Shown here piece after piece: positions 3,030 to 49,564 of a stretch of 64,000 nucleotides of DNA. Location of the stretch: positions 124,001 through 188,000 of the forward strand of contig NIVC01001104.1 of assembly GCA_002269645.1 (NCBI GenBank), in the 5' to 3' direction. A model generated the notes under the pieces. The model had not been told where the DNA came from. It was given only the letters and a program-made list of their open reading frames with translations, and did no database searches. Positions within the stretch are counted from its first letter, which is position 1; every line of letters begins with the position of its first letter. The position numbers were made by a program, and so were the translations under genes. The DNA is from Macrostomum lignano. Taxonomy: Eukaryota.

Positions 3030-4325
3030 CTGACTGTCAGTGACCAATTTGACTGTCAGTGACCAATTTGACTATCAGTGACCAATTTGACTATCAGTGA
3101 CCAATTTGACTGTCAGTGACCAATTTGACTATCAGTGACCAATTTGACTGTCAGTGACCAATTTGACTATCAGTGACCAATTTGACTGTCAGTGACCAAT
3201 TTGACTGTCAGTGACCAATTTGACTATCAGTGACCAATTTGACTGTCAGTGACCAATTTGACTGTCAGTGACCAATTTGACTGTCAGTGACCAATTTGAC
3301 TATCAGTGACCAATTTGACTGTCAGTGACCAATTTGACTGTCAGTGACCACTTTGACTATCAGTGACCAATTTGACTGTCAGTGACCAATTTGACTATCA
3401 GTGACCAATTTGACTATCAGTGACCAATTTGACTGTCAGTGACCAATTTGACTGTCAGTGACCAATTTGACTATCAGTGACCAATTTGACTGTCAGTGAC
3501 CAATTTGACTGTCAGTGACCACTTTGACTATCAGTGACCAATTTGACTGTCAGTGACCAATTTGACTATCAGTGACCAATTTGACTATCAGTGACCAATT
3601 TGACTGTCAGTGACCAATTTGACTGTCAGTGACCAATTTGACTGTCAGTGACCAATTTGACTGTCAGTGACCAATTTGACTGTCAGTGACCAATTTGACT
3701 GTCAGTGACCAATTTGACTGTCAGTGACCAATTTGACTATCAGTGACCAATTTGACTGTCAGTGACCAATTTGACTGTCAGTGACCAATTTGACTGTCAG
3801 TGACCAATTTGACTGTCAGTGACCAATTTGACTGTCAGTGACCAATTTGACTGTCAGTGACCAATTTGACTGTCAGTGACCAATTTGACTGTCGGTGACC
3901 AATTTGACTGTCAGTGACCACTTTGACTGTCAGTGACCACTTTGACTGTCAGTGACCAATTTGACTGTCAGTGACCAATTTGACTGTCAGTGACCAATTT
4001 GACTATCAGTGACCAATTTGACTGTCAGTGACCAATTTGACTGTCAGTGACCAATTTGACTATCAGTGACCAGTTTGACTATCAGTAACAGATTTAACTG
4101 TCATTGACAATTGACTGTCAGTGACCAATTTGACTATCAGTGACCAATTTGACTGTCAGTGACCAATTTGACTATCAGTGACCAGTTTGACTATCAGTGA
4201 CCAGTTTGACTGTCAGTGACCAATTTGACTATCAATGACCAATTTGACTGTCAGTGACCAATTTGACTGTCAGTGACAAATTGGACTGTCAGTGACAATT
4301 GACTGTCAGTGAAAATTTGACTTCC
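3030..4325. repeat. 19 bp minisatellite (TGACTGTCAGTGACCAATT)n, ~68 copies
   Basis: Highly homogeneous tandem array with a G/A variant (TGACTATCA). Confidence 0.97.
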
Positions 4326-4495
4326 AGTGAGAGCCAAATGACCTTCAAATTTATAGATATTATGCGGAAAGCTTAGTTAACCTCCGCTAGTACTTGAGCA
4401 TAGGCTTCTTATTGAATCAGTAAAGCACACAAGTAATTGTAAAACCCAAATTAATTTCTTGTCCGTCCGTGACTCTGGAAGGCGATCGAGCTTAC

Positions 4496-17513: not shown

Positions 17514-20500
17514 TTTTTTTTTTTTTTTTTAGTAGTAAGTTGGCTCAGGCAAGAAGCCTGTTTGGCCAATATATTTCTGTGTATAGTGTATTTAAGGTTA
17601 CTTCAGGAATAGGAGACAATATTTTAGCACTAGTTATTTAATTATGATTAGTACGAGTTTTGCAATATGGTATTTTAAAAGAACGCGGAAATGTTATTAA
17701 CGTTACTTGGACGACTAACGAAGCGAAAGGAAAAGCAAGGGGTTAAAAAAGTATTGCGTGAAATTTATGTATGTAGTTGGTGGTATTGCACGAATCAGCT
17801 TAGTCCTTACGTTATAAAAGTAAATTTATATAGATATTAATTAGATGACAACAAAATTGAATACAATATGAAATTTGAAAGAGCGTGAAAAACGAACGAA
17901 AAATGAACAAAAACGAACTTCGAAAGAACTTTACGTTAAACGAATAACGACGATTTAAATAGGTAATAGATAGGAAGCTAATTAAATACTAATTAAATGC
18001 TAATTAAATAGGAAATTAAAAAGACAGTAAATGAATAAACAAAAGAAAAGCGGATTTATTACACTGCTGATATGTCTGTTTCAGTTTGCATAACTGTTTT
18101 AGCTATTCATGACTTCATATATTTTAGCTACACCAGTGAGCTCTTTTCTGACTCTTTTTTCATTTGTAGCATATCCTAACTTGTGTACTTGCTTGTCATT
18201 TAAGAGGTACTGACAGAAGTATTTTTTTCTGATCTTTTCAGTTTGTGGACTTTCGGTCAAGTAGTGTAGGATATCGGAACCATTTCTCGCTCCACACAGT
18301 CTACATGCTTCATGGGAGAAAATGTTGGGTGTAATTTCGCATTTCAGTTTTAGGAGGGTTGTTAGGTATTTTTTTGTTTCTAAAAGTGCATGGAAAGTAA
18401 TCTGAAAGGTCGGGCCTGCAGATTTTTTTGTAGAGATAGGCGTTTTTGTAGAGTTTAATATGTTGCTGATTCTCTAGCTTTTGACTAAGTTCTCTCTCTC
18501 TGTGTATCTTGAGGTGCTTTTTCACTAGGTATTTCTCGTTATTAAAGCTTTGGGAAAGTTTATCTTCAGTTAGTGCTTTTAAGTCTATACTTTCCAGTTT
18601 CTTTAGTACATTTGTTTTCCAAGGATTTTTTTGGCTGGTGTTTGAGTAGAAAATTTTTAGTGTCGTTTGGCAAAGTTTTTGGTGTCTAATCTTCAGCCAG
18701 TAGGTAAGGTAGGTTTTAGCGATTCGTTGGGAGATTGGAGTAAGCTCAAGTTCTGATGATATCACACTGTTGCTAGCAAATTTTGGTAGGTTGAGGAGAT
18801 ATTTGTAGAATTTCAGCTGAATGTTATCAAACTAACTACTGAATTCACCGGCTGTTGGGTTCACCGGATTTTTAACTTTATTTTTAAGGCTTCAAAATAT
18901 ATATAATCGATAGCGCAAGTAAAACTAGAGATGCGCCTAGATTTTTGGCTCTGCGCGTTGCCCCTGGACATCAGGAGGGCGATTTTTGTTATTTTTTGGG
19001 GGGTGAAACCGGCGGTGAACCCAATAAATCCTTCCAGAGAGCTGAAAACCTGTCATGCAATATTTCAAAGCAAAATATAGGCAGATTTCGACGTGCGCAT
19101 AAAATTTCAGCGTTGCGCGTTGCTCCTGAACTGCAGGAGAACGTTTTTTGTTAAATTCCGGTGTTGAATGACTGCCGCTGAACTCCGCGGTGAACGAAAT
19201 TAAGTGCGTTTCCCGAGTCGAAAAATAGTAAATTTTCCTATTAAAAAAGTTATCAAAGTAAAGTTTTATCACTTTCATCAGCATTTTTGCACTCCCTTTT
19301 GTGTTGACTGTTAAGCTATTTATTTTAATGCAAAGCGAAAACATTAAAAAAATATTTTGAACTGCGAGTCTTTATTGCGCAACGTGGCAGCAGGCAGTTA
19401 CAGCGCACTTGCGCATAAAAAATACATTATATTTATACGCCGTGTGGTATTTTTGTGGTCATACTTAATAATGAAGCCTTTTATTGGCTAGTAATATTAC
19501 ATAAAATTACAAGTAATTAAATAGGCTAGTATAGTAAATATTTTTACTGCATGTTATAGTTATTATTTTATAAAAGTATACTAAGTGGCTGCCTGAAGTA
19601 ATTGAATTTATACTTAATGGAAAAGCACTATGGAATCTTAAATAGATATTATGTTTATAATTTGACTTATTAGAAGAGAAGAAATATTAAAATAGAGGTT
19701 TTAACAAGTTGTAAAAAGCATCAAGCCAAGAAATGCCAATTTTATTTTATTGCCTATACTGATATTAACACTTTGACTGCATGTTTCAAGACGTAATTGA
19801 AAAATAAATCTAAAAATATAGGAAGTAAAACAGCATAAAAGGCTTCATTATTAAGTATGACCAAAAAAATACCACACGGCGTATAAATATAATGTATTTT
19901 TTATGCGCAAGTGCGCTGTAACTGCCTGCTGCCACGTTGCGCAATAAAGACTCGCAGTTCAAAATATTTTTTTAATGTTTTCGCTTTGCATTAAAATAAA
20001 TAGCTTAACAGTCAACACAAAAGGGAGTGCAAAAATGCTGATGAAAGTGATAAAACTTTACTTTGATAACTTTTTTAATAGGAAAATTTACTATTTTTCG
20101 ACTCGGGAAACGCACTTAATTTCGTTCACCGCGGAGTTCAGCGGCAGTCATTCAACACCGGAATTTAACAAAAAACGTTCTCCTGCAGTTCAGGAGCAAC
20201 GCGCAACGCTGAAATTTTATGCACACGTCGAAATCTGCCTATATTTTGCTTTGAAATATTGCATGACAGGTTTTCAGCTCTCTGGAAGGATTTATTGGGT
20301 TCACCGCCGGTTTCACCCCCCAAAAAATAACAAAAATCGCCCTCCTGATGTCCAGGGGCAACGCGCAGAGCCAAAAATCTAGGCGCATCTCTAGTTTTAC
20401 TTGCGCTATCGATTATATATATTTTTAAGCCTTAAAAATAAAGTTAAAAATCCGGTGAACCCAAGTGCCGGTGAATTCAGTAGTTAGTTGTTATCAATAG

Positions 20501-23220
20501 CTTTTGTTTCAGAAATGGTAGCCAGAGGGCCCCAGAGCTCACAGCCGTACGTGATAACGGGGGTGACAAGCGCGTCGAATAGTCTGCGAATGAGTGTGAT
20601 GTCCAGGGACGTATTTTTTACCTTGTGGAGTAGGGAAAACATGGCTGTATATCCCTGCTTAGTTTGATGTTCAATACATTTTTTAAAGCTGTTTTTTGGT
20701 TCAAAAATAATTCCCAGGTATTTAAATTCATTTACTTCCTCTATTTCTTGGTTGTCGTAGATTATTTTTGTAGCAAAGCTTTCTGTGTCGTTTTTTTGCC
20801 TGGTACTGCCCTGCATAAACTTTGTTTTGCTTGCATTTACTTTCAAGTAGTTTTGCTTGCAGTAATTTTCCATAGTCGTAAATGTGTCTTGGAGTTCGTC
20901 TTTGTTTTTAGCTAGAATGGCTTGATCGTCTGCAAAGAGCATGCAGGATGAGTGGGAAAGCAGTTCTCGAAAGAGAGCGCCTAGCGCTAGAGAGTTCAAG
21001 ATATTCAACAATGTCGTCAATATATAGTTCAAAAAGAATGGTAGAGAGAGGGTTGCCTTGAAGAACACCTTTAGATATTGGGATTGGCTGGGTTTCATCA
21101 TCATCATCATCTTTTTTTAGAATGAAGCAGGCATTTTTATGCATGTTCTTGATAAGTTCCGTCATTTGACCTTTAATACCCTGGTTATCCGTTTTGTGCC
21201 AAAGGGTCGGTTGGTTTAAGCTATCGAAGGCTTTTTCATAGTCAACAAATCCGATAAGGAGTTCTTCTTTGTTGTAGATGGATTGGTTTATAATGTTGTA
21301 AAGATTAAAACATTGGTCGATTGTGCTGTGATTGGGCTTGAAACCGTATTGGTATTTTGATATAAGATTGTTTGCGTATGCTAGGTTTTCGAGTCTGGAT
21401 TTAATAATTTGGCAAAAGAGCTTGCCAAAAATTGGTTGAATGCAGATTCCTCTGTAATTGTTGGGGTCGGCACTGCTGCCTTTGTTTTTATAGATCGGAT
21501 GAAGTGTATTTGTAATCCAACTAGTTGGGAAGGTTCCTTGTTTGAGTGCTTCGTTGAAAAGTGAGCATAGGAGGTCAGCAAGTTCGTTTTCAAGGTATTT
21601 GAGTGTTTCTACATATACTTTATCGTGCCCAGGTGCTTTGTCGGTTTTGAGCTTTTTAATATGTTTTATAACTTCTTCTTTGGTGAATGGGGCATTGAAA
21701 TCCTCTAAATCAGCCAGAATAGGGTTGTCAAGGTGAAGATTGTATGATAGTCTAATGTTGCTGTCTTGTTCAGTTACAAGATTTTGAAAGTGTATGACAA
21801 ATTTTTCATCAATTGTTACTCTGTTGTTTGGGGGATTTGGTGTTTTTAATAGGTTCCAAAGTTGTTTTGTATCGTTTTGGATAAAGGCCTGGTTGATCAT
21901 GTTGTCTGCACAGAGAGTTGTTTCAAATTTCCATGAAGTGAGCTTTTTTTCGTATGCTTTTTTGAGTTGTACTTTGCTTGAGAGGTTGTTGGGAGTAGGG
22001 AAGGTTTTATATCTTCTGCAGGCATGTCTAGCAGCGTTTCTTAAATCTTTAAGGAAGCGAGGCAGTGTTGAGCATAGTGGGTTCTTTATCTCTACTGTGA
22101 TGTTGTTTTGAATTTGTCTAACTTTTCTACTTAATTCATTTATAAAAGCTGGGTTTTGTATGTCTAGATTTGTGATTTTGTCATTCATGTTTTTCAGGTC
22201 ATTTGCAAAGTTATTGATATGTTTTTCTTGTTGCAGGTTGGGTTTATCTGACTTTTTTAGGACTCTGTATCTCGTTTTCGAGTTATTGCAGTTGCTTGTT
22301 TAGTTTCTGTGATTTCCTCTGTGAATTCACTTGATAGGGAGAGCACTATTTGGTTGTGGTCGCTAAAGTAGGTGTGGTTCTTTACTTTAAAGTCTTCGAG
22401 GTGTTGGAGTAAGCTGGTAGAGACGAAACAGAGATCTATAACAGAGGAACCAGATTTTGAGAGAAAGGTGAATTCACCATTTGTGTCTGATAGTGATCTA
22501 CCATTGATTAGATGCAGGTTGTATGAGTCAGTAATCTGGTTAAGTAGTCTACCATTTTTGCAGTTTTTCTTGTCTTGGCTTTGTCTAGTAAGTGAGATGT
22601 TTTTTGCTCTGGTGGTATATATTGAATTTAAATCTATGTATGAGGTATTGTTTATATGAGCATTGAAGTCTCCAATAAGGAAGATGTTTTCTTCGGAGTG
22701 ATGAGCATCTAGGAGAATTGTTAGCTGTTCCCAATTTTCTTCTTCATAATATTTTGAAGACAGTGGGGGTATATAGGAGTTTATTAAGGTGAAGTTTTTG
22801 TTTTTATCCTTTTTGTGTTTAAAATTTAGCGTCAAGAAGTTTTTATAATGTTTGAATGATTCTGTAACATTGTATTGTGTATCTAGTGACTTTTTGTAAG
22901 CTGTCAATAATCCACCAGAAGCTCTGCCAATGAATTTACAGCCTTTTTTGTTTGCAGGCTTTTGGTATGTTATGTAGTTTTCAGACAGGTTGTTGATTTT
23001 GAGTCGTTTGTTTTCATTTTTTGTGTCTATTATCCAAGTTTCTTGAAGGCAGAGAATATTATTCTTAAAAATTGATTCAGTTTCCAGTAGTTCAAGTTTG
23101 GGAATCATCACAGAGTCTTTTATTGTGTAAAGACCATTGATATTCCATCTTGTAATTGTAATCCAGCTTGTAATCGAGTTATTGTAAAAGATAAAGTATT
23201 TGAAAGCGCGCCAGAATTTT
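17514..23220 (-). mobile_element. Non-LTR retrotransposon (APE endonuclease + RT + C-terminal CCHC), frameshifted and interrupted by a foldback insertion; clade unresolved
   Basis: Endonuclease RWNINGL, LCLQETW, IGDFNAH, SVIDL, FSDHNQI (23220-22257). RT KAPGHD, YRGIC, QYGFK, VDYEKAFDSL, GVLQGNPLS, LFADD, FKYLG (22188-20490). Continues after the insertion as IDNIQLKFYKYLLNLP (from 18830). 3' stem-loop and A17 tail at 17514-17560. Frameshifts near 22260 and 20945. Confidence 0.95.
18831..20488. mobile_element. Non-autonomous foldback DNA element, 1658 bp, 654 bp TIRs (18831-19484 / 19835-20488), 350 bp spacer, 9 bp TSD TGTTATCAA
   Basis: Termini ACTAACTACTG / CAGTAGTTAGT; TGTTATCAA at 18822-18830 and 20489-20497. 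Removing the element plus one TSD restores the LINE frame (GCT ATT GAT AAC ATT CAG). Only a handful of TIR mismatches seen. Confidence 0.93.
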
Positions 23221-25680: not shown

Positions 25681-26529
25681 TCACGGTGCGGTTTGACCAT
25701 CACCATCGACCACTGGAGCTGGCGGCTGCTGTTCAGTCTCCATTGGCAAGTCCTTCACATGCGGCTTCTCCTGGGCTGGCGGAGCCTCGAACGGCGCCAG
25801 AATGGTCAGCCGGCCGTCGTGACTGAGCTTGCTCGCCACCTGGTCCAGCTTGGTGCCGTCCGGCAGCTGGAAGATTCGCTCCAGCTTCTTGTACACCCGC
25901 TGCCCGCCGGCCTCCTCCTTGTGCTCCGCCTCAACCAGCACGCAGTCGCCCTGCTGTCTGACGCGAATCTCCTCCGGCTTGAACTCGCGCACGGACAGCT
26001 CGGCGCAGAATCGCTTGCCGCCCCCGTCGACATCTTCGACGTGGCCCATGGAGTCCTGGCTGATGTCCGGCGCTCTCAGTAACTCGCGCAGCTCATCCCA
26101 CACTGAGTTCTCCGTCTTCTGCTTCTGCAATTGCTGCTGCTGCTGGTCCCGAAGCTCCTCCTTGAACGGCGCCTGCAGTAGAAGAATTCCTTCTCTAGTA
26201 AATCCGCTGCTAAGCTTCTCAACATCAACGTCTTCTGGCACGTCGATGGTTCGCTTGACCTCAGTGACATCTTCGCCGTCCTCGTGGCGTGCCGCTATCC
26301 GCATCTTGCAGCCGTCTCGCTTCACCGACACCTCGCTGGGCTCGAAGCCTCGCAGGTCCACCGACCGAGTCCACTGGCGCGGCCGCTTCGGCCCGCGGCT
26401 CCTCAGCCGGTGCACCAGAGGGTCGTGGTGGGGCAGCAGGGCGTCGTCCAGCTCGCTTAGAGCTGCCAGCAAAGGCAGCGAATGCGAGAATGGAGTATAG
26501 ACGTTGCTAGGCGCTAGCCAGAGAGACAT
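25681..26529 (-). CDS. Small heat-shock protein with two tandem alpha-crystallin domains (p40/major egg antigen-like architecture), intronless, 282 aa
   Basis: Domain 1 VDLRGFEPSEVSVK...RTIDVPEDVDVEKLSSGFTREGILLLQAP; domain 2 LSVREFKPEEIRVR...ERIFQLPDGTKLDQVASKLSHDGRLTILAP. Confidence 0.93.
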   Translation of the reverse strand: MSLWLAPSNVYTPFSHSLPLLAALSELDDALLPHHDPLVHRLRSRGPKRPRQWTRSVDLRGFEPSEVSVKRDGCKMRIAARHEDGEDVTEVKRTIDVPEDVDVEKLSSGFTREGILLLQAPFKEELRDQQQQQLQKQKTENSVWDELRELLRAPDISQDSMGHVEDVDGGGKRFCAELSVREFKPEEIRVRQQGDCVLVEAEHKEEAGGQRVYKKLERIFQLPDGTKLDQVASKLSHDGRLTILAPFEAPPAQEKPHVKDLPMETEQQPPAPVVDGDGQTAP

Positions 26530-26612
26530 GCTGTTGTTGACTGGCGTATTATAATTGCTGATTTGAACAGTTCGGTGAAAACTTAACTTCTAAACACGAT
26601 GTGCTTTCTAGC

Positions 26613-26696
26613 TTAAATAGACTTGCTCTGACCTTCCAGAATATTCCAAATTGTAATGCGTTAAGAAAATTCTAGAATGTTCTTAAGTTGACGTGT
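26613..26696 (-). promoter_or_regulatory. sHSP promoter: TATA-like box, two perfect heat-shock elements and a CRE/ATF-like site
   Basis: TATTTAA on minus (26619-26613); TTCcaGAAtaTTC (26634-26646); GAAaaTTCtaGAAtgTTC (26665-26682); TGACGTG (~26689-26695). All lie 85-170 bp upstream of the sHSP ATG. Confidence 0.85.
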
Positions 26697-27059
26697 CTCA
26701 ACATATTAATCTTGTGAGGGCTACTTTAGCTACTAACAGTAGAAAAATTAGCAAAATGTCGTACATATTTTAGAATGCTTATATTTTCTCAAGAAAGACT
26801 AGATTTGTTTTCATTATAATTATAACTGATAAGTTAATCAGTTAAATCAATTTTTTTTTCTAAATTATTAAATCAGATATTAAAATAATGAGATCAACAA
26901 CGATTTAAAAGTACGGTACGCTTATAAATGATTCTCAATTCAATCAACATAAAAAACCGACCTTCTCATAAAAAGTCTGTAAGAGGTTTGTAAAAAGTCT
27001 AGTTAATAGATGGAACATTTTACGTACACGGTACACATCATTTTTAATGTAGAATTCAC

Positions 27060-27065
27060 AAAAAA
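27060..27065 (-). terminator. Pol III terminator (T6) of the 5S gene
   Basis: TTTTTT directly after the 5S 3' end on the minus strand. Confidence 0.85.
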
Positions 27066-27183
27066 GACAACGGCATTTGGTATTCCCAGGCGGTCACCCA
27101 TCCAAGTACTAACCAAACCCAACGTTGCTTAACTTCGGTGATCAGACGAGAACCGGTGTTTTCAACGTGGTATGGCCGTTGCC
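27065..27183 (-). rRNA. 5S: 5S rRNA gene, single copy in the window
   Basis: GGCAACGGCCATACC...CGAAGTTAAGC (box A)...AGTACTTGGATGGGTGACCGCCTGGGAATACC (box C)...CCGTTGTC; 119 nt, terminal stem pairs, AT-rich element at about -25 to -30. Confidence 0.97.
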
Positions 27184-27240
27184 ACTGGCTAATAGGAGCT
27201 TAGCTCATAATTAACCTGAACCTGCAGCTATACATAATAA

Positions 27241-27497
27241 CAGTAGTGGCGGCGCAGCACCAACTCCGATTAGAGGGGGTGGTTGTTGGGTGGTCACCCC
27301 CCCTTCGCCGGCGAATTTTTAGAGCATCGCATAAAATCTCACAAAAACGCATATAACGAGCTCGTACTAAAGAAATTATTGTGGGTCAGACCACGGAGGG
27401 ATGGGAGGTACATGTAAGTCACCACCCCCCAGGAGGGTAGGTAGGAGGTCGCCCGGGGGCAGCAGCACCCTCTGCCCCCCCCCCGGCGCCACCACTG
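27241..27497. mobile_element. Short MITE-like element
   Basis: Imperfect TIRs CAGTAGTGGCGGCG / CGGCGCCACCACTG with G/C runs inside; no clear TSD. Confidence 0.5.
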
Positions 27498-27894
27498 ATA
27501 CCTAATAGGTAGTACGCTTAATTACGGGGCGTCTCGTCTCATATATAAGAGCAACAGTTGGTGGTGATTGCAATTATTAACCAATAGCTAGCTCAACGCA
27601 AGTGCAGTGCAGTTCGACTTTTTAATTTTAATTAGCGCCATCCCATAAAAAAGTTGTACAATTGTACATGTACTCGTATATAGTCATAGAAGAGCAATTG
27701 ATCTAAAAAATACATTTCATTATGGCAAATCGATCCAAGAGATCGAGCCTGCACTGTGTACTGCACACCGCGATGCGCTCGCTGTATTATGTGTCTCTTG
27801 ATGCTGCTGGTGCGACTCGAGGGCGAATGAATAATCATTATTTATTGTACACACGGATAATTATTAATAATCAATTAATTTAGGCTTTGTTGGG

Positions 27895-28006
27895 TAGCCG
27901 CGGAAGCGCGGCTTGTCAAAAATTGAGTAGATCGCTCAATTGGATCCACGCGGTGTCTTACCATGCAAAATTAAGAGTCTTCGCAGTAAGAGACCGTCGG
28001 CATGGC
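27895..28006 (-). ncRNA. SL RNA: Spliced-leader (SL) RNA gene, flatworm type; predicted leader 28006..27962 (45 nt)
   Basis: Leader GCCATGCCGACGGTCTCTTACTGCGAAGACTCTTAATTTTGCATG then donor GTAAGA. Hairpin across the donor (GGTCTCTTAC/GTAAGACACC and TGCGAAG/TTTTGCA); stem-loop II GTGGATC/GATCTAC; Sm site AATTTTTG (27924-27917); terminal hairpin AGCCGCG-CTTC-CGCGGCT. The core closely resembles the Macrostomum SL as I recall it. The 5' end is inferred. Confidence 0.92.
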
Positions 28007-28133
28007 AAAGTGAAATTAGGTGGAACACACCAGCTGGCTCTAGCAAGGGCAACAGTTCTGCGCTTCAGCCGCGAGCCGTAAGCTGAATTATTTTTTTGTC
28101 CGATTTTTTCTACTTAAAGTACGCTACGCCGAC

Positions 28134-28490
28134 TAGGGGCAGAGGGAACGAACTTTTTTTATCTAAGGCCAAGGGCCAGACAAAGAAAGCAGCTCATGAC
28201 TGCGGACCAGAGGGGAGAGAAAAGGAGAAGGAATAATGGATAGAGGAGAATAGGAGATCCGAGATTCGAGATGACGGAAAGAGAAAAGGCGAGAGAGAAG
28301 ATGAGAGAAAGGATAAGAGGAGACAAGAAAGATTAGGAGAAAGGAGAGAGAGATGATAAGCAAGATGATAAGCCAAGGAGCGAAAATGAAAGCAGAGGGT
28401 GAGAAAAGAGGAGAGAAGAGACACAAACCTTGAGCGGGCCGGATTGCTATTGTGAAGTCTCAAAGGACCCGTGGGCCAGATAGAGTTTGA
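28134..28490 (+). mobile_element. hAT-like MITE (family copy 3) with GA core
   Basis: AAGGGCCAGAC...GA tract...AAACCTTGAGCGGGCCGGATTGCTATTGTGAAGTCTCAAAGGACCCG shared with the other copies. Confidence 0.7.
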
Positions 28491-28780
28491 GTGGTAACCT
28501 TGAGTGGTACCCCCCCCCCCTCCGTAATGCATGGCTCCCCGCCCATGCTCCAAAACAAGCTCCTTATCGCATTATACTACAAATTGTTGGGCCTCATTGG
28601 ACAGAATTTTATCCCGTAGAAATTCCAATTGCCAACAAATTGTAACTGGCCCAGCCAAACTGTCAGCCAGCCAATTAAACGCTAAAAATCTGCATGGGGT
28701 CGTCTTTATAAAATACGAATGCGTTACTAAACTGAATAATGGTAAAAGCTTGAAGCAACAATTCCATTCTAATTGAAAGC

Positions 28781-31626
<2,846 letters not shown>

Positions 31627-31724: not shown

Positions 31725-33960
31725 TACAGGTAATCATCAGTTAAGTGGTGGATTGATAGATAATCATCAGTTAATTTATAGATAATCCTCAGTTAGTTGA
31801 TCGATGATCCTCAGTTAATTGATCGATAATCCTCAGTTAATTGATATATAATCCTCGGTTAATTGATATATAATCCTCAGTTTATTTGATCGATAATCCT
31901 CAGTTAATTGATAGATAATCATCAGTTAATTGATAGATAATCCTCAGTTAATTGATAGATAATCCTCAGTTAATTGATAGATAATCCTCAGTTAATTGAT
32001 CGATAATCCTCAGTTAATTGATAGATAATCCTCAGTTAATTGATATATAATCCTTAGTTAATTGATAGATAATCCTCAGTTAATTGATAGATAATCCTCA
32101 GTTAATTGATAGATAATCCTCAGTTAATTGATAGATAATCCTCAGTTGATTGATATATAATCCTCAATTAGTTGTTCGATAATCCTCAGTTAGTTGTTCG
32201 ATAATCCTCAGTTAATTGATAGATAATCCTCAGTTAGTTAATTGATAGATAATCCTCAGTTAATTGATAGATAATCCTCAGTTAATTGATAGACAATCCT
32301 CAGTTAATTGATAGATAATCCTCAGTTAATTGATAGATAATCCTCAGTTAATTGATAGATAATCCTCAGTTAATTGATAGATAATCCTCAGTTAATTGAT
32401 AGATAATCCTCAGTTAATTGATATATAATCCTCAGTTAATTGATAGATAATCCTCAGTTAATTGATAGATAATCCTCAGTTAATTGATAGATAATCCTCA
32501 GTTAATTGATAGATAATCCTCAGTTAATTGATAGATAATCCTCAGTTAATTGATATATAATCCTCAGTTAATTGATATATAATCCTCAGTTAATAGATAT
32601 ATAATCCTCAGTTAATTGATAGATAATCCTCAGTTAATTGATAGATAATCCTCAGTTAATTGATAGATAATCCTCAGTTAATTGATATATAATCCTCAGT
32701 TAATTGATATATAATCCTCAGTTAATTGATATATAATCCTCAGTTAATTGATGTATAATCCTCAGTTAATTGATAGATAATCCTCAGTTAATTGATAGAT
32801 AATCATCAGTTAATTGATAGATAATCCTCAGTTCATTGATATATAATCCTCAGTTCATTGATATATAATCCTCAGTTAATTGATAGATAATCCTCAGTTA
32901 ATTGATATATAATCCTCAGTTAATTGATATATAATCCTCAGTTAATTGATAGATAATCCTCAGTTAATTGATATATAATCCTCAGTTAATTGATATATAA
33001 TCCTCAGTTAATTGATAGATAATCATCAGTTAGTTGACCGATAATCCCCAGTTAATTGATCGATAATCCTCAGTTAATTGATATATAATCCTCGGTTAAT
33101 TGATAGATAATCCTCAGTTCATTGATATATAATCCTCAGTTCATTGATATATAATCCTCAGTTAATTGATATATAATCCTCAGTTAATTGATAGATAATC
33201 ATCAGTTAGTTGATAGATAATCCCCAGTTAATTGATCGATAATCCTCAGTTAATTGATATATAATCCTCAGTTAATTTATAGATAATCCTCAGTTCATTG
33301 ATATATAATCCTCAGTTAATTGATATATAATCCTCAGTTAATTGATAGATAATCCTCAGTTAATTGATATATAATCCTCAGTTAATTGATAGATAATCCT
33401 CAGTTAATTTATAGATAATCCTCAGTTAATTGATATATAATCCTCAGTTAATTGATAGATAATCCTCAGTTAATTGATAGATAATCCTCAGTTAATTGAT
33501 ATATAATCCTCAGTTAATTGATATATAATCCTTAGTTAATTGATAGATAATCCTCAGTTAATTGATAGATAATCCTCAGTTAATTGATAGATAATCCTCA
33601 GTTAATTGATAGATAATCCTCAGTTAATTGATAGATAATCCTCAGTTAATTGATAGATAATTCTCAGTTAATTGATAGATAATCCTCAGTTAATTGATAG
33701 ATAATCCTCAGTTCATTGATATATAATCCTCAGTTAATTGATAGATAATCCTCAGTTAATTGATAGATAATCCTCAGTTAATTGATAGATAATCCTCAGT
33801 TAATTGATAGATAATCCTCAGTTAATTGATAGATAATTCTCAGTTAATTGATAGATAATCCTCAGTTAATTGATAGATAATCCTCAGTTCATTGATATAT
33901 AATCCTCAGTTAATTGATAGATAATCCTCAGTTAATTGATAGATAATTCTCAGTTAATTG
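31725..33960. repeat. 22 bp minisatellite (ATAATCCTCAGTTAATTGATAG)n, ~100 copies
   Basis: Starts about 100 bp after the Sox stop codon. Confidence 0.97.
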
Positions 33961-35029
33961 ACTACCTGTTGACTGTCATGTCGTGGATTACAAAATCAAA
34001 ATTTAATTTATAATGTTTTCAGTAACGTTAATGTGTCTTGGTGTCTTACTCTTATATTGTGAAATAAACTTCTTTTTTGCAAAAATATACCCAAGTACAC
34101 ATCTTATCAAACACAGCCGACAAAAGTTATGTCATTTGTTTTACTATTTATAATTATTAGAAAATTAAATACTCTCTCAGCAGCTGAGAGGAACAGGACA
34201 GAACAATAAAAAACTGCTCAAAATTCATGCCGCAAAAAAGTCTTAACGGATTGAGATAAATCAACAAAATCTATTGCGCATCGCAGCAATCGACTCCCCA
34301 ATTAGAAGAGGGGATCGCGGCGCCCCCCCCCCACAGAAGGATTGTAAATGAGTATTATATTAGGCAAGACAAAGAAAACCCAGTCTGGTATTATGCGCAA
34401 ACAATAGCACAGACTCAATGGGCTTTATTCAGCTTCCCAGCAGCAGTCAACTGTCTTGAAGAAGCCGCTGCTCACAATTGCAACAAAGCAGAGTTGCTTT
34501 TAATTGTTTCCAGAAATCGGCAGCAGAAACAGCAACAGCAGAAAAAATCAATTTAAAAAAATAGTTTTTATTTTCCACAGCTAACTGCTTTCCGCTGCAA
34601 GAAAAAATTGGCTACGAGAAAAACCCCTGAGCTGAGTGTGATCCGCTCCGCTGCGATGACTGCAGCTTGGTGGAGAACAATAACCTATTGTTTTCGCCAC
34701 CCATTGTGGAGCAAACCTTTGTCGGTGTAGAATCAACTGCTTTGTTATTTTGCCGTCTTCTTCAGTGCGCCCGCCGCCCTTGCATTCAAGCAGAATACTG
34801 TTTAGCATTGCCTGTACAGGTAAAAATATCCCAATTAACTTGGCATAAATGCATCGCGCCCACTCGGAACAGCTGGACCGTAGAAGGAGCAGTCATTTCA
34901 TTTCGATTTCAACGTTTTTTATTGTTTTCGGCCATTTCAAAAACGATCAAACGGGAGGCATTGAGACGGGAAAATAGGAGTTTAAAAACAGTGCAGCATG
35001 TTGAATAGCTGCAGAGAAGCATGAATTTG

Positions 35030-36827: not shown

Positions 36828-39800
36828 ATGTCTGAACTCGAAATGGAGCAGCAGATGGAGCAGCAGCTTGAGCAGCAGTTTGAGCAGCAGCTTGAGCAGC
36901 AGCTTGAGCAGCAGCTTGAGCAGCGGACCAATTCCGCTCCAATCGTCGTTGACGAAGAGTTCAACGAGGAGTGCCTGGAGGCGCACAACGAATGCCGGGA
37001 ACTGCACGGCTGTCCACCGTTGGAGCTGTCGGAGAAGCTGGCTAGGAGTGCTCAGGCTTGGGCCAACCACCTGGCCAGTCTTGGCCGGCTGCAGCACAGC
37101 ACGCCCAACCGAGAGGCAGCTACGGCGAGAACATAGCCATGAAGATGGTGCAGGGCAGTCAGGAGTACAGGGGCAGTCAGTGCACGGCGCAGTGGTACTC
37201 GGAGATTGAGATGTACGACTTCAACGGCGGAGAGAACCAGATGAATTGCGGTGAGTTGAGAACTACCTGCCTGGCTGGGGCACCGATGCTGTAGTTACCT
37301 GCCTGGCTGGGGTGGAGGGGCTGGGGAAACCGATGCTGTAGTTATCTCCCTGGCTGGAGTGGAGGGGCTGGGGCACCGATGCTGTAGTTATATCCCTGGC
37401 TGGGGTGGAGGGGCTGGGGGCACCGATGCTGTAGTTATATCCCTGGCTGGGGTGGAGGGGCTGGGGGCACCGATGCTGTAGTTATATCCCTGGCTGGGGT
37501 GGAGGGGCTGGGGGCACCGATGCTGTAATTATCTACCTGGCTGGGGTGGAGGGGCTGGGGCACCGATGCTCTAATTATCTACCTGGCTGGGGTGGAGGGT
37601 CTGGGGCACCGATTATCTACCTGGGGCATCGATGCTGCAATTATCTGCTGTCCCGTGTTAACTGCAGGTCACTTCTCTCAGGTGGTGTGGAAGAGCACCA
37701 AGGAGGCCGGCTTCGGGAAGGCGATGGCACCAGACGGCAAGATGTTTACAGTCGGGCAGTACTCTCCCCCGGGAAACTTCATGAACAAGTGGCGCGCCAA
37801 CATTCCCGCGCCCCTGTCTGGTGAGATTTGGGTGCCGACGCGCGACGATATCAGTGAGTGCCAAGATGACATAAATTGTTAAATCGTTTCATTCTGCAAG
37901 GTTGAAGATTCAGAGAATGAGCTGCAATGAGAAGGGGAAGAGAGACTGGAGATGAGATGGGAAAGAGAGACTGGAAATGAGATACGGAAGAGAGACTGGA
38001 GATTAGATGAGGAAGAGAGACTGGAGATGAGATGAGAGAGAGAGAGACTGGAGATGAGATGGGGAAGAGAGACTGGAGATGAGATGAGAGAGAGAGACTG
38101 GAGATGAGATGGGGAAGAGAGACTGGAGATTAGATGAGGAAGAGAGACTGGAGATGAGATGAGAGAGAGAGAGACTGGAGATGAGATGGGGAAGAGAGAC
38201 TGGAGATGAGATGAGAGAGAGAGAGAGACTGGAGATGAGATGGGGAAGAGAGACTGGAGATGAGATGAGAGAGAGAGACTGGAGATGAGATGGGGAAGGA
38301 GACTGGAGATGAGATGAGAGAGAGAGACTGGAGATGAGATGAGGAAAAGAGAGCCTGTAGATGAGATGGGTAAGAGAGACTATAGATAAAGATGGAGTGA
38401 GACTGCAGATGAAAAGAATGGACAGGTGGAGCATTATCCAGTCCCTTGTCACGAACAGTGGGCGGCCAAAGCTCGCAGCAGCAGCAGCAGCCGCAGCAGC
38501 CGCAGCAGTACATCAAGCAGCAGCCGCAGCAGCCGCAGCAGTACATCAAGCAGCAGCCGCAGCAGCCACAGCAGTACATCAAGCAGCAGCCGCAGCAGCC
38601 GCAGCAGCCCCAGCAGTCAGTCATCAGCCAAGGAGGCGGCCAGGAACCCGACCCGGCCGATCCGAGTGACCGGCCGGTTGGCAAAGCCACGAAAACTCGA
38701 ATTGTGAACGGCGAGAAGACCGTGACGGTGACGGTGACCTTCGCCAGGCCGGACGGAAGTCGCTACCAGCTGTCGAAGGAGACCACGACTAGTCAGGACG
38801 GCGGCTCCCAGCCGGCGCGCCCCGACATCGGCCAGGAGATGATCATCCAGCCGACTCGATTTCGTCGAAATTTTGCCGCTCCGCCGACGGTGTCTGGCAA
38901 TGACGGCGGCGGCGAAGACGACGCCGAGCTTAGAGAGACATTCGCTGACGAGGTGGCCAAGCAGCACAACGAGCTGCGCAGGAGGCACGGAGCTCCGGAG
39001 CTTCGCCGATCGAAGTCTTTGGACCGGCTGGCGCAGAGCTGGGCCGAGTTGCTCAGCCAGTCGGGGAGGCTGCAGCATCGCCCAGCCGAGGACTTCAACG
39101 ACGCCAGCGTTGGGCAGAATATCGCGAAGAGGCCGGCGGAGGACACCAGCGGGTGGGACTGGCGGCAGGCTGGCAGGCAGCTGGTGCTGCAGTGGTACGG
39201 CGAGAGACACCGGTTCGACTTCGGGAGGCCCGACCCTGGCGACATATGCGGAGGTGCGTAGCCGGGCTTGGTCTGGCATCTCTACCCTCTGAGGGCCGTT
39301 TGGGGCTGGCATCTCTACCCTCTGAGGGCCGTTTGGGGCTGGCATCTCTACCCTCGGAGGGCCGTTTGGGGCTGGCATCTCTACCCTCGGAGGGCCGTTT
39401 GGGGCTGGCATCTCTACCCTCTGAGGGCCGTTTGGGGCTGTTACCTTTACCTTCTGGGGGTGTGGATAGGCTGGTCTGTAGGTATCCAGAGTAGAGTTCC
39501 GTGTGTTTGGTTCCGTGTGTATGTAGGGTCTGGTTCCGTGTGTATGTAGGGTTTGGTTCCGTGTGTACATTGGGTCTGGTTCCGTGTGTATGTAGGGTTT
39601 GGTTCCGTGTGTATGTAGGGTCTGTTTCCGTGTGTATGTAGGGTTTGGTTCCGTGTGTATGTAGGGTCTGTTTCCGTGTGTACATTGGGTCTGGTTCCGT
39701 GTGTATGTAGGGTCTGGTTCCGTGTGTATGTAGGGTTTGGTTACGTGTGTATGTAGGGTTTGGTTCCGTGTGTATGTAGGGTTTGGTTCCGTGTCTATGT

Positions 39801-40869
39801 AGGGTTTGGTTCCTTGTGTATGTAGGGTTTGGTTCCGTGTGTATGTAGGGTTTGGTTCCGTGTGTATGTAGGGTTTGGTTCCGTGTCTATGTAGGGTTTG
39901 GTTCCGTGTGTATGTAGGGTTTGGTTCCGTGTCTATGTAGGGTTTGGTTCCGTGTGTATGTAGGGTTTGGTTCCGTGTGCATGTAGGGTTTGGTTCCGTG
40001 TGTATGTAGGGTTTGGTTCCGTGTGTATGTAGGGTCTGTTTCCGTGTGTACATTGGGTCTGGTTCCGTGTGTATGTAGGGTCTGGTTCCGTGTGTATGTA
40101 GGGTTTGGTTCCGTGTGTATGTAGGGTTTGGTTCCGTGTCTATGTAGGGTTTGGTTCCGTGTGTATGTAGGGTTTGGTTCCGTGTCTATGTAGGGTTTGG
40201 TTCCGTGTGTATGTAGGGTTTGGTTCCGTGTGCATGTAGGGTTTGGTTCCGTGTGTATGTAGGGTTTGGTTCCGTGTGTATGTAGGGTCTGTTTCCGTGT
40301 GTACATTGGGTCTGGTTCCGTGTGTATGTAGGGTCTGGTTCCGTGTGTATGTAGGGTTTGGTTACGTGTGTATGTAGGGTTTGGTTCCGTGTGTATGTAG
40401 GGTTTGGTTCCGTGTCTATGTAGGGTTTGGTTCCTTGTGTATGTAGGGTTTGGTTCCGTGTGTATGTAGGGTTTGGTTCCGTGTGTATGTAGGGTTTGGT
40501 TCCGTGTCTATGTAGGGTTTGGTTCCGTGTGTATGTAGGGTTTGGTTCCGTGTCTATGTAGGGTTTGGTTCCGTGTGTATGTAGGGTTTGGTTCCGTGTG
40601 CATGTAGGGTTTGGTTCCGTGTGTATGTAGGGTTGGTTCCGTGCGTACTAGGGTCTGGTTTTGCTGGTATCATGATGTGGTGCATTCCAAAATGCATTAT
40701 TTTCACAACAGGTCACTTCAGCCAGCTGGTTTGGTGCTCCTCCGAGGACCTGGGCGTCGGGCTGGCCGTGGACCCGGACACCGGAGACCAGTACGCCGCC
40801 TGCTTTTACCGGCCTGGCGGAAATCTGGCCGGCCAATTTGCCGATAACGTGCTGCCAAGCTACGATTAA
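36828..40869 (+). CDS. Double CAP/SCP-domain protein (GAPR-1-like, no signal peptide), join(36828..37250,37668..37820,38459..39253,40712..40869), ~509 aa after correcting one frameshift near 37110
   Basis: Domain 1 AHNECRELHG, GENIA, QWYSE, GHFSQVVW, QYSPPGN; domain 2 QHNELRRRHG, GQNIA, QWYGE, GHFSQLVW, FYRPGGN. All three introns are GT-AG and phase 1; Gln/Pro-rich linker. Could alternatively be two genes (in-frame stop at 37882 if the 37821 donor is not used). Confidence 0.85.
37265..37650. repeat. ~46 bp G-rich minisatellite in CAP intron 1
   Basis: GGCTGGGGTGGAGGGGCTGGGGGCACCGATGCTGTAGTTATATCCCT, about 8 copies. Confidence 0.9.
37930..38400. repeat. GA-rich repeat (GAGAGACTGGAGATGAGATG) in CAP intron 2
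   Basis: Direct inspection. Confidence 0.9.
39270..40650. repeat. 33 bp array (39270-39440) then 23 bp array (GTGTGTATGTAGGGTTTGGTTCC)n (39500-40650) in CAP intron 3
   Basis: Direct inspection; about 50 copies of the 23-mer. Confidence 0.93.
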
Positions 40870-42960: not shown

Positions 42961-43222
42961 GTGTCTCTGCAAAGCACGGAAAAACCAAACTACGAGGCAA
43001 GCCTCTCACGAAACAAAATTAGCTAAATACTCTACTATCAGTAAAAATTAGCACAATTTCAGTACAAATTAATCACGCAACTGCTCAGCAATCCACCGCT
43101 TCCCTTGGACAGCCAATCGAGCAAGCCGGTATGCCGGGCATTAAAGCGCCGGCTCAGTCCAAACACTGGCATTGAGCACAGAGACAACTCAATTTCTCGG
43201 CATCAAGTTCACCATAGACAAG

Positions 43223-45419
<2,197 letters not shown>

Positions 45420-48024: not shown

Positions 48025-49175
48025 TAGTGAGAGTGACAGATGGTTTGTGAGTGAGAGTGACAGATGGTTAGTGAGTGAGAGTGACAGATGGTTAGTGAGT
48101 GAGAGTGACAGATGGTTAGTGAGTGAGAGTGACAGATGTTTAGTGAGTGAGAGTGACAGATGGTTAGTGAGTGAGAGTGACAGGTGGTTAGTGAGTGAGA
48201 GTGACAGATGGTTAGTGAGTGAGAGTGACAGGTGGTTAGTGAGTGAGAGTGACAGATGGTTAGTGAGTGAGAGTGACAGATGGTTAGTGAGTGAGAGTGA
48301 CAGATGGTTAGTGAATGGGAGTGACAGATGGTTAGTGGGGGAAAGTGATAGTGAAAGATGGTTAGTGGGTGAAAGTGAGAGTGAAAGATGGTTAGTGGGT
48401 GAAAGTGAGAGTGACAGATGGTTAGTGGGTGAAAGTGAGAGTGACAGATGGTTAATGGGTTAAAGTGAGAGTGACAGATAGTTATTGGGTGAAAGTGAGA
48501 GTGACAGATGGTTAATGGGTGAAAGTGAGAGTGACAGATGGTTAGTGGGTGAAAGTGAGAGTGACAGATGGTTATTGGGTGAAAGTGAGAGTGACAGATG
48601 GTTAATGGGTGAAAGTGAGAGTGAAAGATGGTTAGTGGGTGAAAGTGAGCGTGACAGATGGTTAATGGGTGAAAGTGATAGTGACAGATGGTTAGTGAGT
48701 GAGAGCGACAGATGGTTAGTGAATGGGAGTGACAGATGGTTAGTGAGTGAGAGCGACAGTTGGTTAGTGGGTGAAAGTGAGAGTGACAGATGGTTAATGG
48801 GTTAAAGTGAGAGTGACAGATGGTTAATGGGTTAAAGTGAGAGTGACAGATGGTTAGTGGGTGAAAGCGAGAGGGACAGATGGTTAATGGGTGAAAGTGA
48901 TAGTGACAGATGGTTTAGTGGGTGAAAGTGAGAGTGACAGATGGTTAATGGGTTAAAGTGAGAGTGACAGATGGTTATTGGGTGAAAGCGAGAGTGACAG
49001 ATGATTAATGGGTGAAAGTGAGAGTGACAGATGGTTAATGGGTTAAAGTGAGAGTGACAGATGGTTATTGGGTGAAAGTGAGAGTGACAGATGGTTATTG
49101 GGTGAAAGTGAGAGTGACAGATGGTTATTGGGTGAAAGTGAGAGTGACAGATGGTTATTGGGTGAAAGTGAGAGT
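48025..49175. repeat. 24/30 bp minisatellite (GAGAGTGACAGATGGTTAGTGAGT / ...GGGTGAAAGT)
   Basis: Direct inspection. Confidence 0.95.
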
Positions 49176-49564
49176 GTAGCACGTGACCTCTGTTTGATTC
49201 CATGCGTTCTCTATTTTCTAAGACATGAGCAGGATCGGCTCAGGCTCTTTGATGGAGACGATGAAAACCCGTCACTCCAGCTCCGTCATGCATAATTGAC
49301 TTTTCCAGTTGAGCTGGCGGCTGACGCTCAGTGCAAACTTTGACACTACGTTTCCGTCTATTAGTTGCACCGACGAGTGCTGGCGAGACACCTCACCTGC
49401 TCACATGGCAGGCACCAGCCTTTCTCCGTTTTCAGCTCCCCTTTGGCAGGCATCCTTGAGCTCCTAAGCTGACTTCAGTTGGGAGTGCCAAACGAGGTGA
49501 GGAGAGCTCACCGCTCCTCCACTCACTCACAATGACTTACCTTGATAACTACCACCGAATATAC

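What the first reader, a model, noticed from the sequence alone, without database searches (positions are those of the whole stretch)
27962..28006. SL leader that carries its own complete uORF in frame with the terminal AUG
Seen: the predicted 45 nt leader reads GCC ATG CCG ACG GTC TCT TAC TGC GAA GAC TCT TAA TTT TGC ATG. That is a 10-codon uORF (MPTVSYCEDS*) followed 6 nt later by the flatworm-typical terminal AUG in the same frame. Recalled and unverified: the canonical M. lignano leader (GCCGTAAAGACGGTCTCTTACTGCGAAGACTCAATTTATTGCATG) has the same length but lacks both the upstream AUG and the TAA, so both come from the variant positions. Inference: if used, this leader would add a uORF to every mRNA it is spliced onto, a portable translational-control module. 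Its position upstream of a heat-shock gene makes stress-dependent use worth testing. Caveats: an AUG 3 nt from the cap may be poorly recognised, and the changes weaken the small 5' hairpin, so this could be a species variant or a decaying copy.
Basis: partly seen in the sequence, partly recalled or inferred. Interest (0 to 1): 0.8.

Follow-up and report, generated by a model that had tools for sequence, protein, structure and literature searches.

The report
Divergent second spliced-leader RNA gene
The flatworm Macrostomum lignano carries, beside a 5S rRNA gene, an unreported second type of spliced-leader RNA gene whose 45-nt leader happens to contain a tiny reading frame, but nothing here shows that this leader is used or that the reading frame does anything.

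Summary
The minus strand 28006..27962 reads GCCATGCCGACGGTCTCTTACTGCGAAGACTCTTAATTTTGCATG. It holds a 10-codon uORF (MPTVSYCEDS*) in frame with the terminal AUG. A GTAAG donor, two further hairpins and an AAUUUUUGA Sm site follow, so this is a complete ~115-nt SL RNA gene.

The window is M. lignano itself (Mlig_3_7, NIVC01001104.1). That species uses the canonical leader, so this is a paralogue, not a species variant. Three redundant loci in the assembly carry it, each in the order SL variant, 5S rRNA, HSP20.

Against the canonical gene, 42 nt are unchanged (exon 9-32, and exon 39 to intron 56). Two exon blocks and the 3' half are rebuilt, yet the three-hairpin fold is kept. The new 5' CCAUGC pairs with the intron's GCGUGG. 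This points to long structural constraint.

The three recent copies differ at 5 sites within the gene, 2 of them in the leader. The canonical leader is invariant across five taxa.

I found no evidence of use. No paper mentions the variant, and RNA-seq could not be queried.

An in-frame uORF arises by chance in about 4% of comparable leaders, and its AUG lies 3 nt from the cap. HSP20 has its own heat-shock promoter.

Most likely this is a minor or relic SL RNA gene with an incidental uORF.

The parts
27892..28006 (-). Complete variant SL RNA gene, about 115 nt. The 3' end is approximate.
   Evidence: Sequence read. It folds into three stem-loops, dG -39.8 kcal/mol, z = -4.2 against shuffles. 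It is alignable to canonical SL RNA genes L011 and L012.
27962..28006 (-). 45-nt leader exon, GCCATGCCGACGGTCTCTTACTGCGAAGACTCTTAATTTTGCATG
   Evidence: 36 of 45 positions match the canonical leader. The context CTTTGCC at the 5' end is shared with canonical genes L011 and L012.
27971..28003 (-). uORF: AUG 28003-28001, nine further codons, UAA 27973-27971 (MPTVSYCEDS*)
   Evidence: Read directly from the sequence. It is kept in all three paralogous copies, and the two exon substitutions among them are both synonymous Ser changes. The chance rate is about 4%.
27962..27964 (-). Flatworm-type 3'-terminal AUG of the leader
   Evidence: It is in frame with the uORF, 6 nt after the UAA.
27956..27961 (-). 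Trans-splice donor GUAAGA. The first 11 intron nt (GTAAGACACCG) are identical to the canonical genes.
28000..28005 (-). 5' arm CCAUGC (leader nt 2-7, contains the upstream AUG) of a stem extension specific to the variant
   Evidence: In the MFE and centroid folds it pairs with GCGUGG, RNA nt 56-61.
27946..27951 (-). Intron arm GCGUGG that pairs with the variant 5' end
   Evidence: The canonical genes have GGUGAU or GUUGAU at this place.
27921..27941 (-). Stem-loop II (AAUUGAG / CUCAAUU), rebuilt relative to the canonical GAUCCA / UGGAUC hairpin
27916..27924 (-). Sm-binding site AAUUUUUGA, which fits the consensus RAU(n)GR
   Evidence: Read. It lies between stem-loops II and III.
27896..27913 (-). 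Stem-loop III (AGCCGCG CUUC CGCGGCU)
27065..27183 (-). 5S rRNA gene, about 710 nt downstream of the SL RNA gene on the same strand, followed by a T-run
   Evidence: Rfam RF00001, 117.4 bits, full length. It is identical in all three paralogous loci.
25681..26529 (-). Neighbouring HSP20/alpha-crystallin gene (context only, not part of the SL RNA gene), with its own heat-shock elements at 26682-26665 and 26647-26634
   Evidence: Pfam PF00011, E = 5e-23. Promoter read. The database gene model P0001 is 296 aa.

Best explanation
This is a genuine, anciently diverged paralogue of the Macrostomum spliced-leader RNA gene. It lies next to a 5S rRNA gene and is present at three redundant loci of the M. 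lignano DV1 assembly.

Shown: it keeps every sequence feature needed to donate a leader. These are the conserved leader core, the terminal AUG, a GUAAG donor held in stem I, an Sm site and two flanking hairpins.

Inferred mechanism: if it is transcribed, it assembles into an Sm snRNP and donates its 45-nt leader to the same acceptor sites as the canonical SL. It would do so at a low level that read-trimming pipelines built around the canonical sequence would miss.

Inferred origin of the uORF: it is a by-product of two replaced blocks. One block now pairs with the gene's own intron, and the other lies in the apical loop of stem I.

Inferred effect on an mRNA: scanning ribosomes would mostly skip the AUG 3 nt from the cap. 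The rare initiations there would end at the UAA before the terminal AUG. The leader would therefore behave much like the canonical one, not as a dedicated translational switch.
For: Identity of the genome:
- NIVC01001104.1 belongs to GCA_002269645.1, which is Mlig_3_7.
- Three loci carry SL variant, 5S and HSP20 in the same order.

Gene anatomy and fold:
-; dG -39.8 kcal/mol, z = -4.2.

Mosaic conservation against canonical SL RNA genes recovered from a metagenome (L011) and a contaminated MAG (L012):
- Leader nt 9-32, and leader nt 39 through intron nt 56, are 42/42 identical.
- Nt 4-8 and 33-38 are almost fully replaced.
- The 3' part is 34% different with indels, yet still forms two hairpins around an Sm site.
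- At the divergence of the 3' part, 42 unchanged nt have P between 1e-3 and 2e-8.

Variant-specific pairing:
- 5' CCAUGC pairs with intron GCGUGG.

Incidental nature of the uORF:
- 3.6-4.4% chance rate.
- Both variant blocks have structural contexts.

Literature context:
- Flatworm SL paralogues are used interchangeably (PMC12582326).
Against: There is no direct evidence of transcription or trans-splicing.

Only one SL has been reported for M. lignano (PMC12582326; PMC8629364). No paper in the library contains the variant k-mers.

The few metatranscript contigs that carry the shared core all have the canonical 3' end.

Among the three recent copies the gene body carries 5 differences in about 115 nt, where 1.5 are expected (P about 0.02). 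One of them (U18C) breaks a stem I pair. Meanwhile 225 nt upstream, 155 nt downstream, the 5S gene and the HSP20 CDS carry none.

The canonical leader is invariant in five taxa. The variant leader is therefore not under comparable constraint now.

Partial gene conversion from canonical genes could also produce the mosaic pattern.
Confidence: 0.5

Rival explanations
1. Dead or dying SL RNA pseudogene. It is a formerly functional paralogue (an orphon beside a 5S gene) that is no longer transcribed or spliced. The uORF is simply decay.
For: - The density of differences in the gene body among the three copies is higher than background (5 observed, 1.5 expected).
- U18C in L002 and L003 breaks a pair in the otherwise frozen stem I.
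- An upstream AUG is something used leaders normally lack (own knowledge of published SL sequences).
- Only one SL is reported in every Macrostomum transcriptome study.
- SL RNA pseudogenes are documented in other flatworms (PMC12582326; PMC2770079).
Against: - The donor, the terminal AUG, the Sm site and all three hairpins are intact in all three copies.
- The window copy keeps all 42 conserved nucleotides.
- Four of the five differences fall in loops or tails.
- Deep divergence with a retained fold implies selection for most of the gene's history.
- The documented flatworm pseudogenes had lost the donor or the AUG. This gene has lost neither.
Confidence: 0.38
2. Specialised uORF-bearing leader. 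The variant SL is spliced onto a subset of mRNAs or under particular conditions such as stress, and its uORF lowers or redirects initiation.
For: - The uORF, its stop and the terminal AUG are kept in all three copies.
- The two leader substitutions among copies are both synonymous Ser changes. P is about 0.05 given that both lie in the uORF, and about 0.18 for anywhere in the exon; these are my calculations from codon degeneracy.
- The -3 position relative to the AUG is a purine.
- An in-frame stop 6 nt before the terminal AUG would prevent an N-terminal extension.
Against: - The AUG is 3 nt from the cap, where scanning ribosomes initiate poorly (established knowledge, Kozak 1991, not tested here).
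- The chance expectation is about 4%.
- Two synonymous events are too few to argue selection, and copies about 1% diverged would keep the uORF anyway.
- Flatworm SL paralogues show no specialisation (PMC12582326).
- Proximity to HSP20 is irrelevant for an RNA that acts in trans, and HSP20 has its own heat-shock elements.
Confidence: 0.06
3. Assembly or sequencing artefact, or a chimeric copy of the canonical gene.
For: Mlig_3_7 is a PacBio-based, highly redundant assembly with known errors. The CG insertion in L002 could be an indel error.
Against: The same 9 leader differences and the same rebuilt intron occur independently on three contigs, with identical flanks. The differences are block substitutions, not homopolymer indels.
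Confidence: 0.02

Closest known systems
Canonical Macrostomum SL RNA gene (109 bp, 8 copies in the deduplicated M. lignano genome; PMC8629364)
   Same: - 45-nt leader ending in AUG.
- Identical core (nt 9-32).
- Identical donor region (nt 39-56).
- CTTTGCC start context.
- Three hairpins with an Sm site between hairpins II and III.
   Different: - 9 of 45 leader positions differ, creating an upstream AUG and a UAA.
- A new 6-bp pairing joins the 5' end and the intron.
- Stem-loops II and III are rebuilt with insertions.
- The Sm site is closer to consensus.
- The gene is a single copy beside a 5S gene rather than one of the identical repeated copies.
- The leader is polymorphic among copies, whereas the canonical leader is invariant across five taxa.
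Minor SL RNA variants and SL RNA pseudogenes of parasitic flatworms (PMC12582326; S. mansoni has 43 identical genes, 5 variants and 6 suspected pseudogenes, PMC2770079)
   Same: Several SL RNA sequence types coexist in one genome. Some have negligible transcript support. The paralogues are used interchangeably.
   Different: Those variants usually differ by a few bases and are homogenised by concerted evolution in tandem arrays. This one is deeply diverged, solitary and 5S-linked. The described pseudogenes lost the donor or the AUG, and this gene did not.
Nematode SL genes: SL1 genes in tandem with 5S rRNA genes, and dispersed SL2-like genes with 13 different leaders (PMC1657053)
   Same: Physical linkage of an SL RNA gene with a 5S rRNA gene. 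A second, dispersed and sequence-variable class of SL genes exists beside a monomorphic major class.
   Different: There is no tandem array here: one SL and one 5S per locus, on the same strand, about 710 nt apart. There is no evidence of operon-specific use. The lineage and the leader are unrelated.
Flatworm SL 3'-terminal AUG used as initiator, and 'slORFs' created by leaders (Cheng et al. 2006, as cited in PMC9851317)
   Same: A leader can contribute start codons, and therefore reading frames, to its recipient mRNAs.
   Different: Known cases supply a start codon that reads into the mRNA. Here a complete ORF with its own stop lies inside the leader. I found no such case in the papers searched, and the search was not exhaustive.

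Membership tests
Spliced-leader (SL) RNA gene | 5' exon homologous to a leader known to be trans-spliced | tested here: met
   36 of 45 positions match the canonical Macrostomum leader, including a 24-nt exact core. That core is seen on mRNA contigs L009 and L010.
Spliced-leader (SL) RNA gene | GU splice donor immediately after the leader, held in stem I | tested here: met
   ATG|GTAAGACACCG is identical to the canonical genes. The donor is paired with leader nt 16-22.
Spliced-leader (SL) RNA gene | Sm-binding site flanked by hairpins, with a total length of about 100 nt | tested here: met
   AAUUUUUGA lies between stem-loops II and III. The gene is about 115 nt.
Spliced-leader (SL) RNA gene | The RNA is transcribed and its leader is found on mature mRNAs | not testable with these tools
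   No RNA-seq reads are accessible. The only metatranscript contigs with the core carry the canonical 3' end.
Spliced-leader (SL) RNA gene | Match to a curated Rfam SL family | tested here: not met
   Nothing but the 5S gene passed in 26500-29000, even at E <= 10. The canonical genes L011 and L012 gave no hit at E <= 0.1 either. Rfam therefore seems to lack a model for this lineage, and the failure is uninformative.
Canonical (major) Macrostomum SL | Leader identical to GCCGTAAAGACGGTCTCTTACTGCGAAGACTCAATTTATTGCATG | tested here: not met
   9 mismatches. It would be missed by the 100%-identity BLAST used to map SL genes in PMC8629364.
Regulatory uORF | Complete AUG-to-stop frame upstream of the main start, on the mature mRNA | tested here: met
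   The frame is present in the predicted leader. This holds only if transcription starts at or before leader nt 4, which is inferred from the shared CTTTGCC context.
Regulatory uORF | The uORF is translated and changes downstream translation | not testable with these tools
   This needs Ribo-seq or reporters. The position 3 nt from the cap argues against efficient recognition (established knowledge, not tested).
Regulatory uORF | Conservation beyond neutral expectation | tested here: inconclusive
   It is kept in three copies with two synonymous changes. The copies are only about 1-2% diverged, and no orthologue from another species could be retrieved.
SL RNA pseudogene | Loss of the donor, the AUG, the Sm site or the fold | tested here: not met
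   All are intact in the three copies. Only U18C weakens stem I, in L002 and L003.
SL RNA pseudogene | Neutral or elevated substitution rate compared with the flanks | tested here: met
   5 events in about 115 nt against 1.5 expected, Poisson P = 0.018. The numbers are small.

The most novel reading that the evidence does not exclude
M. lignano has a second, functional SL RNA class. Its leader is trans-spliced onto mRNAs, perhaps in particular tissues or conditions. Its cap-proximal 10-codon uORF measurably shifts initiation away from the leader's terminal AUG. That would make it a translational-control element carried by a spliced leader.
Probability: 0.06. Interest if true: 0.8.

Novelty: new member of a known kind. 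Interest (0 to 1): 0.4.

Why it matters
M. lignano is a transgenic flatworm model. Its annotation pipelines find trans-spliced genes by trimming one leader sequence.

A second SL RNA gene type would mean that some trans-splice sites and gene boundaries are being missed, if it is used even at a low level. It would also give a natural pair of leaders for asking what the leader sequence contributes to translation.

If it is a relic, it is still a useful example of how SL RNA genes diverge once they escape concerted evolution. The core and the donor stem stayed frozen, the rest was rebuilt, and the gene sits beside a 5S gene as in nematodes.

The uORF idea deserves attention only after use of the leader has been shown. 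Existing public RNA-seq can settle that quickly.

Tried and rejected
1. Rfam, at gathering thresholds and then at E <= 10. There is no SL family hit, and none for the canonical genes either, so this is uninformative.

2. Search for further SL copies in the window and loci. I used the 21-mer with up to 3 mismatches and short-word blastn with the variant and canonical genes. There is one copy per locus.

3. Literature search for the variant k-mers. There was no relevant hit; the single hit is a walnut primer.

4. Scans with the shared core.
- Metagenome scan and GTDB genome scan: only canonical-type genes and mRNAs were found, and no variant outside M. lignano.
- Viral contigs: nothing.

5. Protein-database proxy for use of the leader, looking for SL-derived N-terminal peptides on predicted proteins.
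- A local HMMER trial showed that 10-residue matches, which is all that k=31 contigs would carry, cannot reach the allowed E <= 10.
- I did not pad the query to get round that limit.

6. Query with the 64-aa antisense ORF that spans the gene, to fish out orthologous loci. There were no candidates.

7. Comparison of upstream regions for a shared snRNA-type promoter element. Only the CTTTGCC start context is shared, and no consistent proximal element was found.

8. A covariance model was considered and dropped. Only five sequences in two types were available, and the blastn search had already answered the copy question.

9. 'Species variant' is rejected, because the window is M. lignano.

10. 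'Co-regulated with the heat-shock gene' is rejected as unsupported.

Full report
**What is there**

The finding's coordinates are right, but the feature lies on the minus strand. Window 28006..27962 reads GCC ATG CCG ACG GTC TCT TAC TGC GAA GAC TCT TAA TTT TGC ATG.

It continues GTAAGACACCGCGTGGATCCAATTGAGCGATCTACTCAATTTTTGACAAGCCGCGCTTCCGCGGCTACCC. That stretch holds a consensus donor, a hairpin, an Sm-type site (AAUUUUUGA) and a GC-rich hairpin.

The 115-nt RNA folds into the classical three-stem-loop SL RNA shape. The energy is -39.8 kcal/mol, z = -4.2, and 0 of 200 shuffles fold as well. The 21-nt core occurs once in the window, with 0 expected.

**Which organism**

The HSP20 protein encoded 1.4 kb downstream is found on exactly three contigs of GCA_002269645.1: NIVC01001104.1, NIVC01003399.1 and NIVC01002601.1. 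NIVC01 is the Macrostomum lignano DV1 assembly Mlig_3_7, which is known to be highly redundant because of chromosome duplication (PMC5730564).

The window matches NIVC01001104.1. The variant is therefore not the leader of another species. It coexists with the canonical SL that M. lignano puts on about 30% of its genes (PMC8629364).

**The canonical leader**

GCCGTAAAGACGGTCTCTTACTGCGAAGACTCAATTTATTGCATG is given for M. cliftonense and, minus 2 nt, for M. hystrix in Table S3 of PMC10468722. Its 35-nt 3' part is given for M. lignano.

The variant differs at positions 4, 6, 7, 8, 33, 34, 35, 36 and 38.

**Canonical genes for comparison**

Scanning public metagenomes and GTDB genomes with the shared core returned two genomic contigs with canonical-type SL RNA genes.
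- L011 is a JGI metagenome contig.
- L012 is a eukaryotic contaminant in a 'Flavobacteriaceae' MAG.
- Two metatranscript contigs also carry the canonical leader on mRNAs.

Both genes have a leader identical to the canonical 45-mer. That leader is therefore invariant in at least five taxa. L011 and L012 are 94.6% identical to each other over 92 nt. The variant aligns to them only over nt 9-56.

**Pattern of divergence**

Compared with the canonical gene:
- Nt 9-32 and nt 39-56 (through the donor) are 42/42 identical.
- Nt 4-8 match at 1 of 5 positions and nt 33-38 at 1 of 6.
- The 3' part is 34% different, with several insertions that rebuild stem-loops II and III.

At the divergence of the 3' part, 42 unchanged positions have P between 1e-3 (substitutions only) and 2e-8.

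The replaced 5' block CCAUGC, which contains the upstream AUG, pairs with GCGUGG in the variant's own intron. This adds 6 bp below stem I. The replaced 3' block, which contains the UAA, lies in the apical loop of stem I, and the A38U change adds a pair.

I read this as an old paralogue that stayed under selection for SL RNA structure. Partial gene conversion from canonical genes is an alternative that I cannot exclude.

**The three copies**

L001 (the window), L002 and L003 all carry SL variant, 5S and HSP20 in the same order. Over 5 kb they differ at 65 events.

Five of these fall inside the ~115-nt gene:
- U18C, shared by L002 and L003.
- T33A, in L003.
- A CG insertion, in L002.
- Two changes in the 3' tail.

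Only 1.5 events are expected there (Poisson P = 0.018). There are none in the 225 nt upstream, the 155 nt downstream, the 5S gene or the 891-nt HSP20 CDS.

U18C breaks a U-A pair of stem I. The other four events lie in loops, junctions or the tail.

All three copies keep the AUG, the UAA, the terminal AUG, the donor and the Sm site. The two leader substitutions are synonymous Ser changes in the uORF. Two events between copies about 1% diverged carry almost no weight.

The leader is thus not held as tightly as the canonical one. This fits either a lightly used gene or one recently released from constraint.

**The uORF**

A complete uORF in frame with the terminal AUG arises in 3.6% of shuffled leaders. 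It arises in 4.4% of canonical leaders given nine random substitutions. Any complete uORF arises in 7-11%.

The AUG is at nt 4-6. It is well established that AUGs within about 12 nt of the cap are mostly bypassed by scanning ribosomes (Kozak 1991; this is my knowledge and was not tested here).

If the AUG were recognised, translation would end 6 nt before the terminal AUG. Re-initiation would then favour downstream AUGs.

As a free 45-mer neither leader folds significantly: -5.7 kcal/mol for the variant and -8.8 for the canonical.

**Neighbourhood**

- A full-length 5S rRNA gene (117 bits) lies about 710 nt downstream on the same strand.
- HSP20 follows. It has two clear heat-shock elements and a TATA-like box of its own.
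- In a related species (Logan SRR31628434/35, HSP20 73% identical) the contigs begin with the last 23 nt of a 5S gene about 860 nt upstream of HSP20. The 5S-HSP20 linkage is therefore older than M. lignano. Whether the SL variant lies beyond that 5S gene could not be seen, because the contigs break there.
- An SL RNA acts in trans, so proximity to HSP20 gives no reason to expect stress-dependent use.

**Evidence of use**

None could be obtained.
- The literature describes a single SL in M. lignano (PMC12582326).
- SL genes were mapped there with a 100%-identity BLAST, and reads were selected by the known leader. A minor variant would have been invisible to both.
- No paper contains the variant k-mers.

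**Comparison with known systems**

- Several SL RNA sequence types per genome, interchangeable use and pseudogenes are documented for parasitic flatworms (PMC12582326; PMC2770079).
- SL-5S linkage, and a dispersed variable second SL class, are classical in nematodes (PMC1657053).
- Leaders that contribute start codons are known: the flatworm terminal AUG and slORFs (PMC9851317).
- A leader that encloses a complete uORF was not found in the papers I searched.

**Verdict**

The object is a real, previously unreported, divergent SL RNA gene of M. lignano, a new member of a known kind.

My estimates are:
- About 0.5 that it is a structurally competent minor SL donor whose uORF is incidental and largely bypassed.
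- About 0.38 that it is a recent pseudogene.
- About 0.06 that the uORF is a working control element.

Counting two k-mers in existing RNA-seq data would decide between these.

Noticed in passing
window 27065-27183 (-); L004 1-23; L005 1-23: A full-length 5S rRNA gene sits between the SL variant and HSP20. In a related species (HSP20 73% identical) the HSP20 contigs also start inside a 5S gene, so the 5S-HSP20 linkage is conserved across species.
   Followed up: partly
window 25681-26529 (-), promoter 26611-26682: A two-domain HSP20/alpha-crystallin gene with textbook heat-shock elements (GAAcaTTCtaGAAttTTC and GGAATATTCTGGAA) and a TATA-like box. Its 891-nt CDS shows no difference among the three paralogous copies, while the flanks differ at about 1.3 events per 100 nt.
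   Followed up: partly
L001 8358-8835 (window about 27737-28214): Differences among the three copies cluster inside the SL RNA gene body. The 225 nt upstream and the 155 nt downstream are identical. This is the reverse of what purifying selection on the gene would give. Transcription-associated mutation is one speculative reading.
   Followed up: partly
window 20484-23111 (-): A non-LTR retrotransposon (LINE) with an endonuclease ORF and reverse-transcriptase ORFs. The RT is split over two overlapping ORFs, so the element is probably degenerate.
   Followed up: no
whole window, e.g. 3031-4330, 31752-33961, 39505-40660, 48026-49176: More than 40 minisatellite arrays with units of 12-54 bp and up to 100 copies. 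Many of the long 'ORFs' in the window are artefacts of these repeats.
   Followed up: no
window 43105-43986 (+): An ORF with a rhodopsin-family 7TM receptor domain (PF00001, E = 1e-10), probably an exon of a GPCR gene.
   Followed up: no
L012 1589-1692 (JAGQZA010000190.1): A contig of a GTDB MAG labelled Flavobacteriaceae (HKST-UBA79) carries a canonical Macrostomum-type SL RNA gene. This is flatworm contamination in a bacterial MAG.
   Followed up: no
window 27275-27301 and 27380-27496 (-): G/C-rich inverted repeats in the spacer between the SL variant and the 5S gene (GGGGGTGGTTG..TGGTCACCCCC, and a G-run/C-run hairpin). They gave only chance-level Rfam hits, and their function is unknown.
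   Followed up: no
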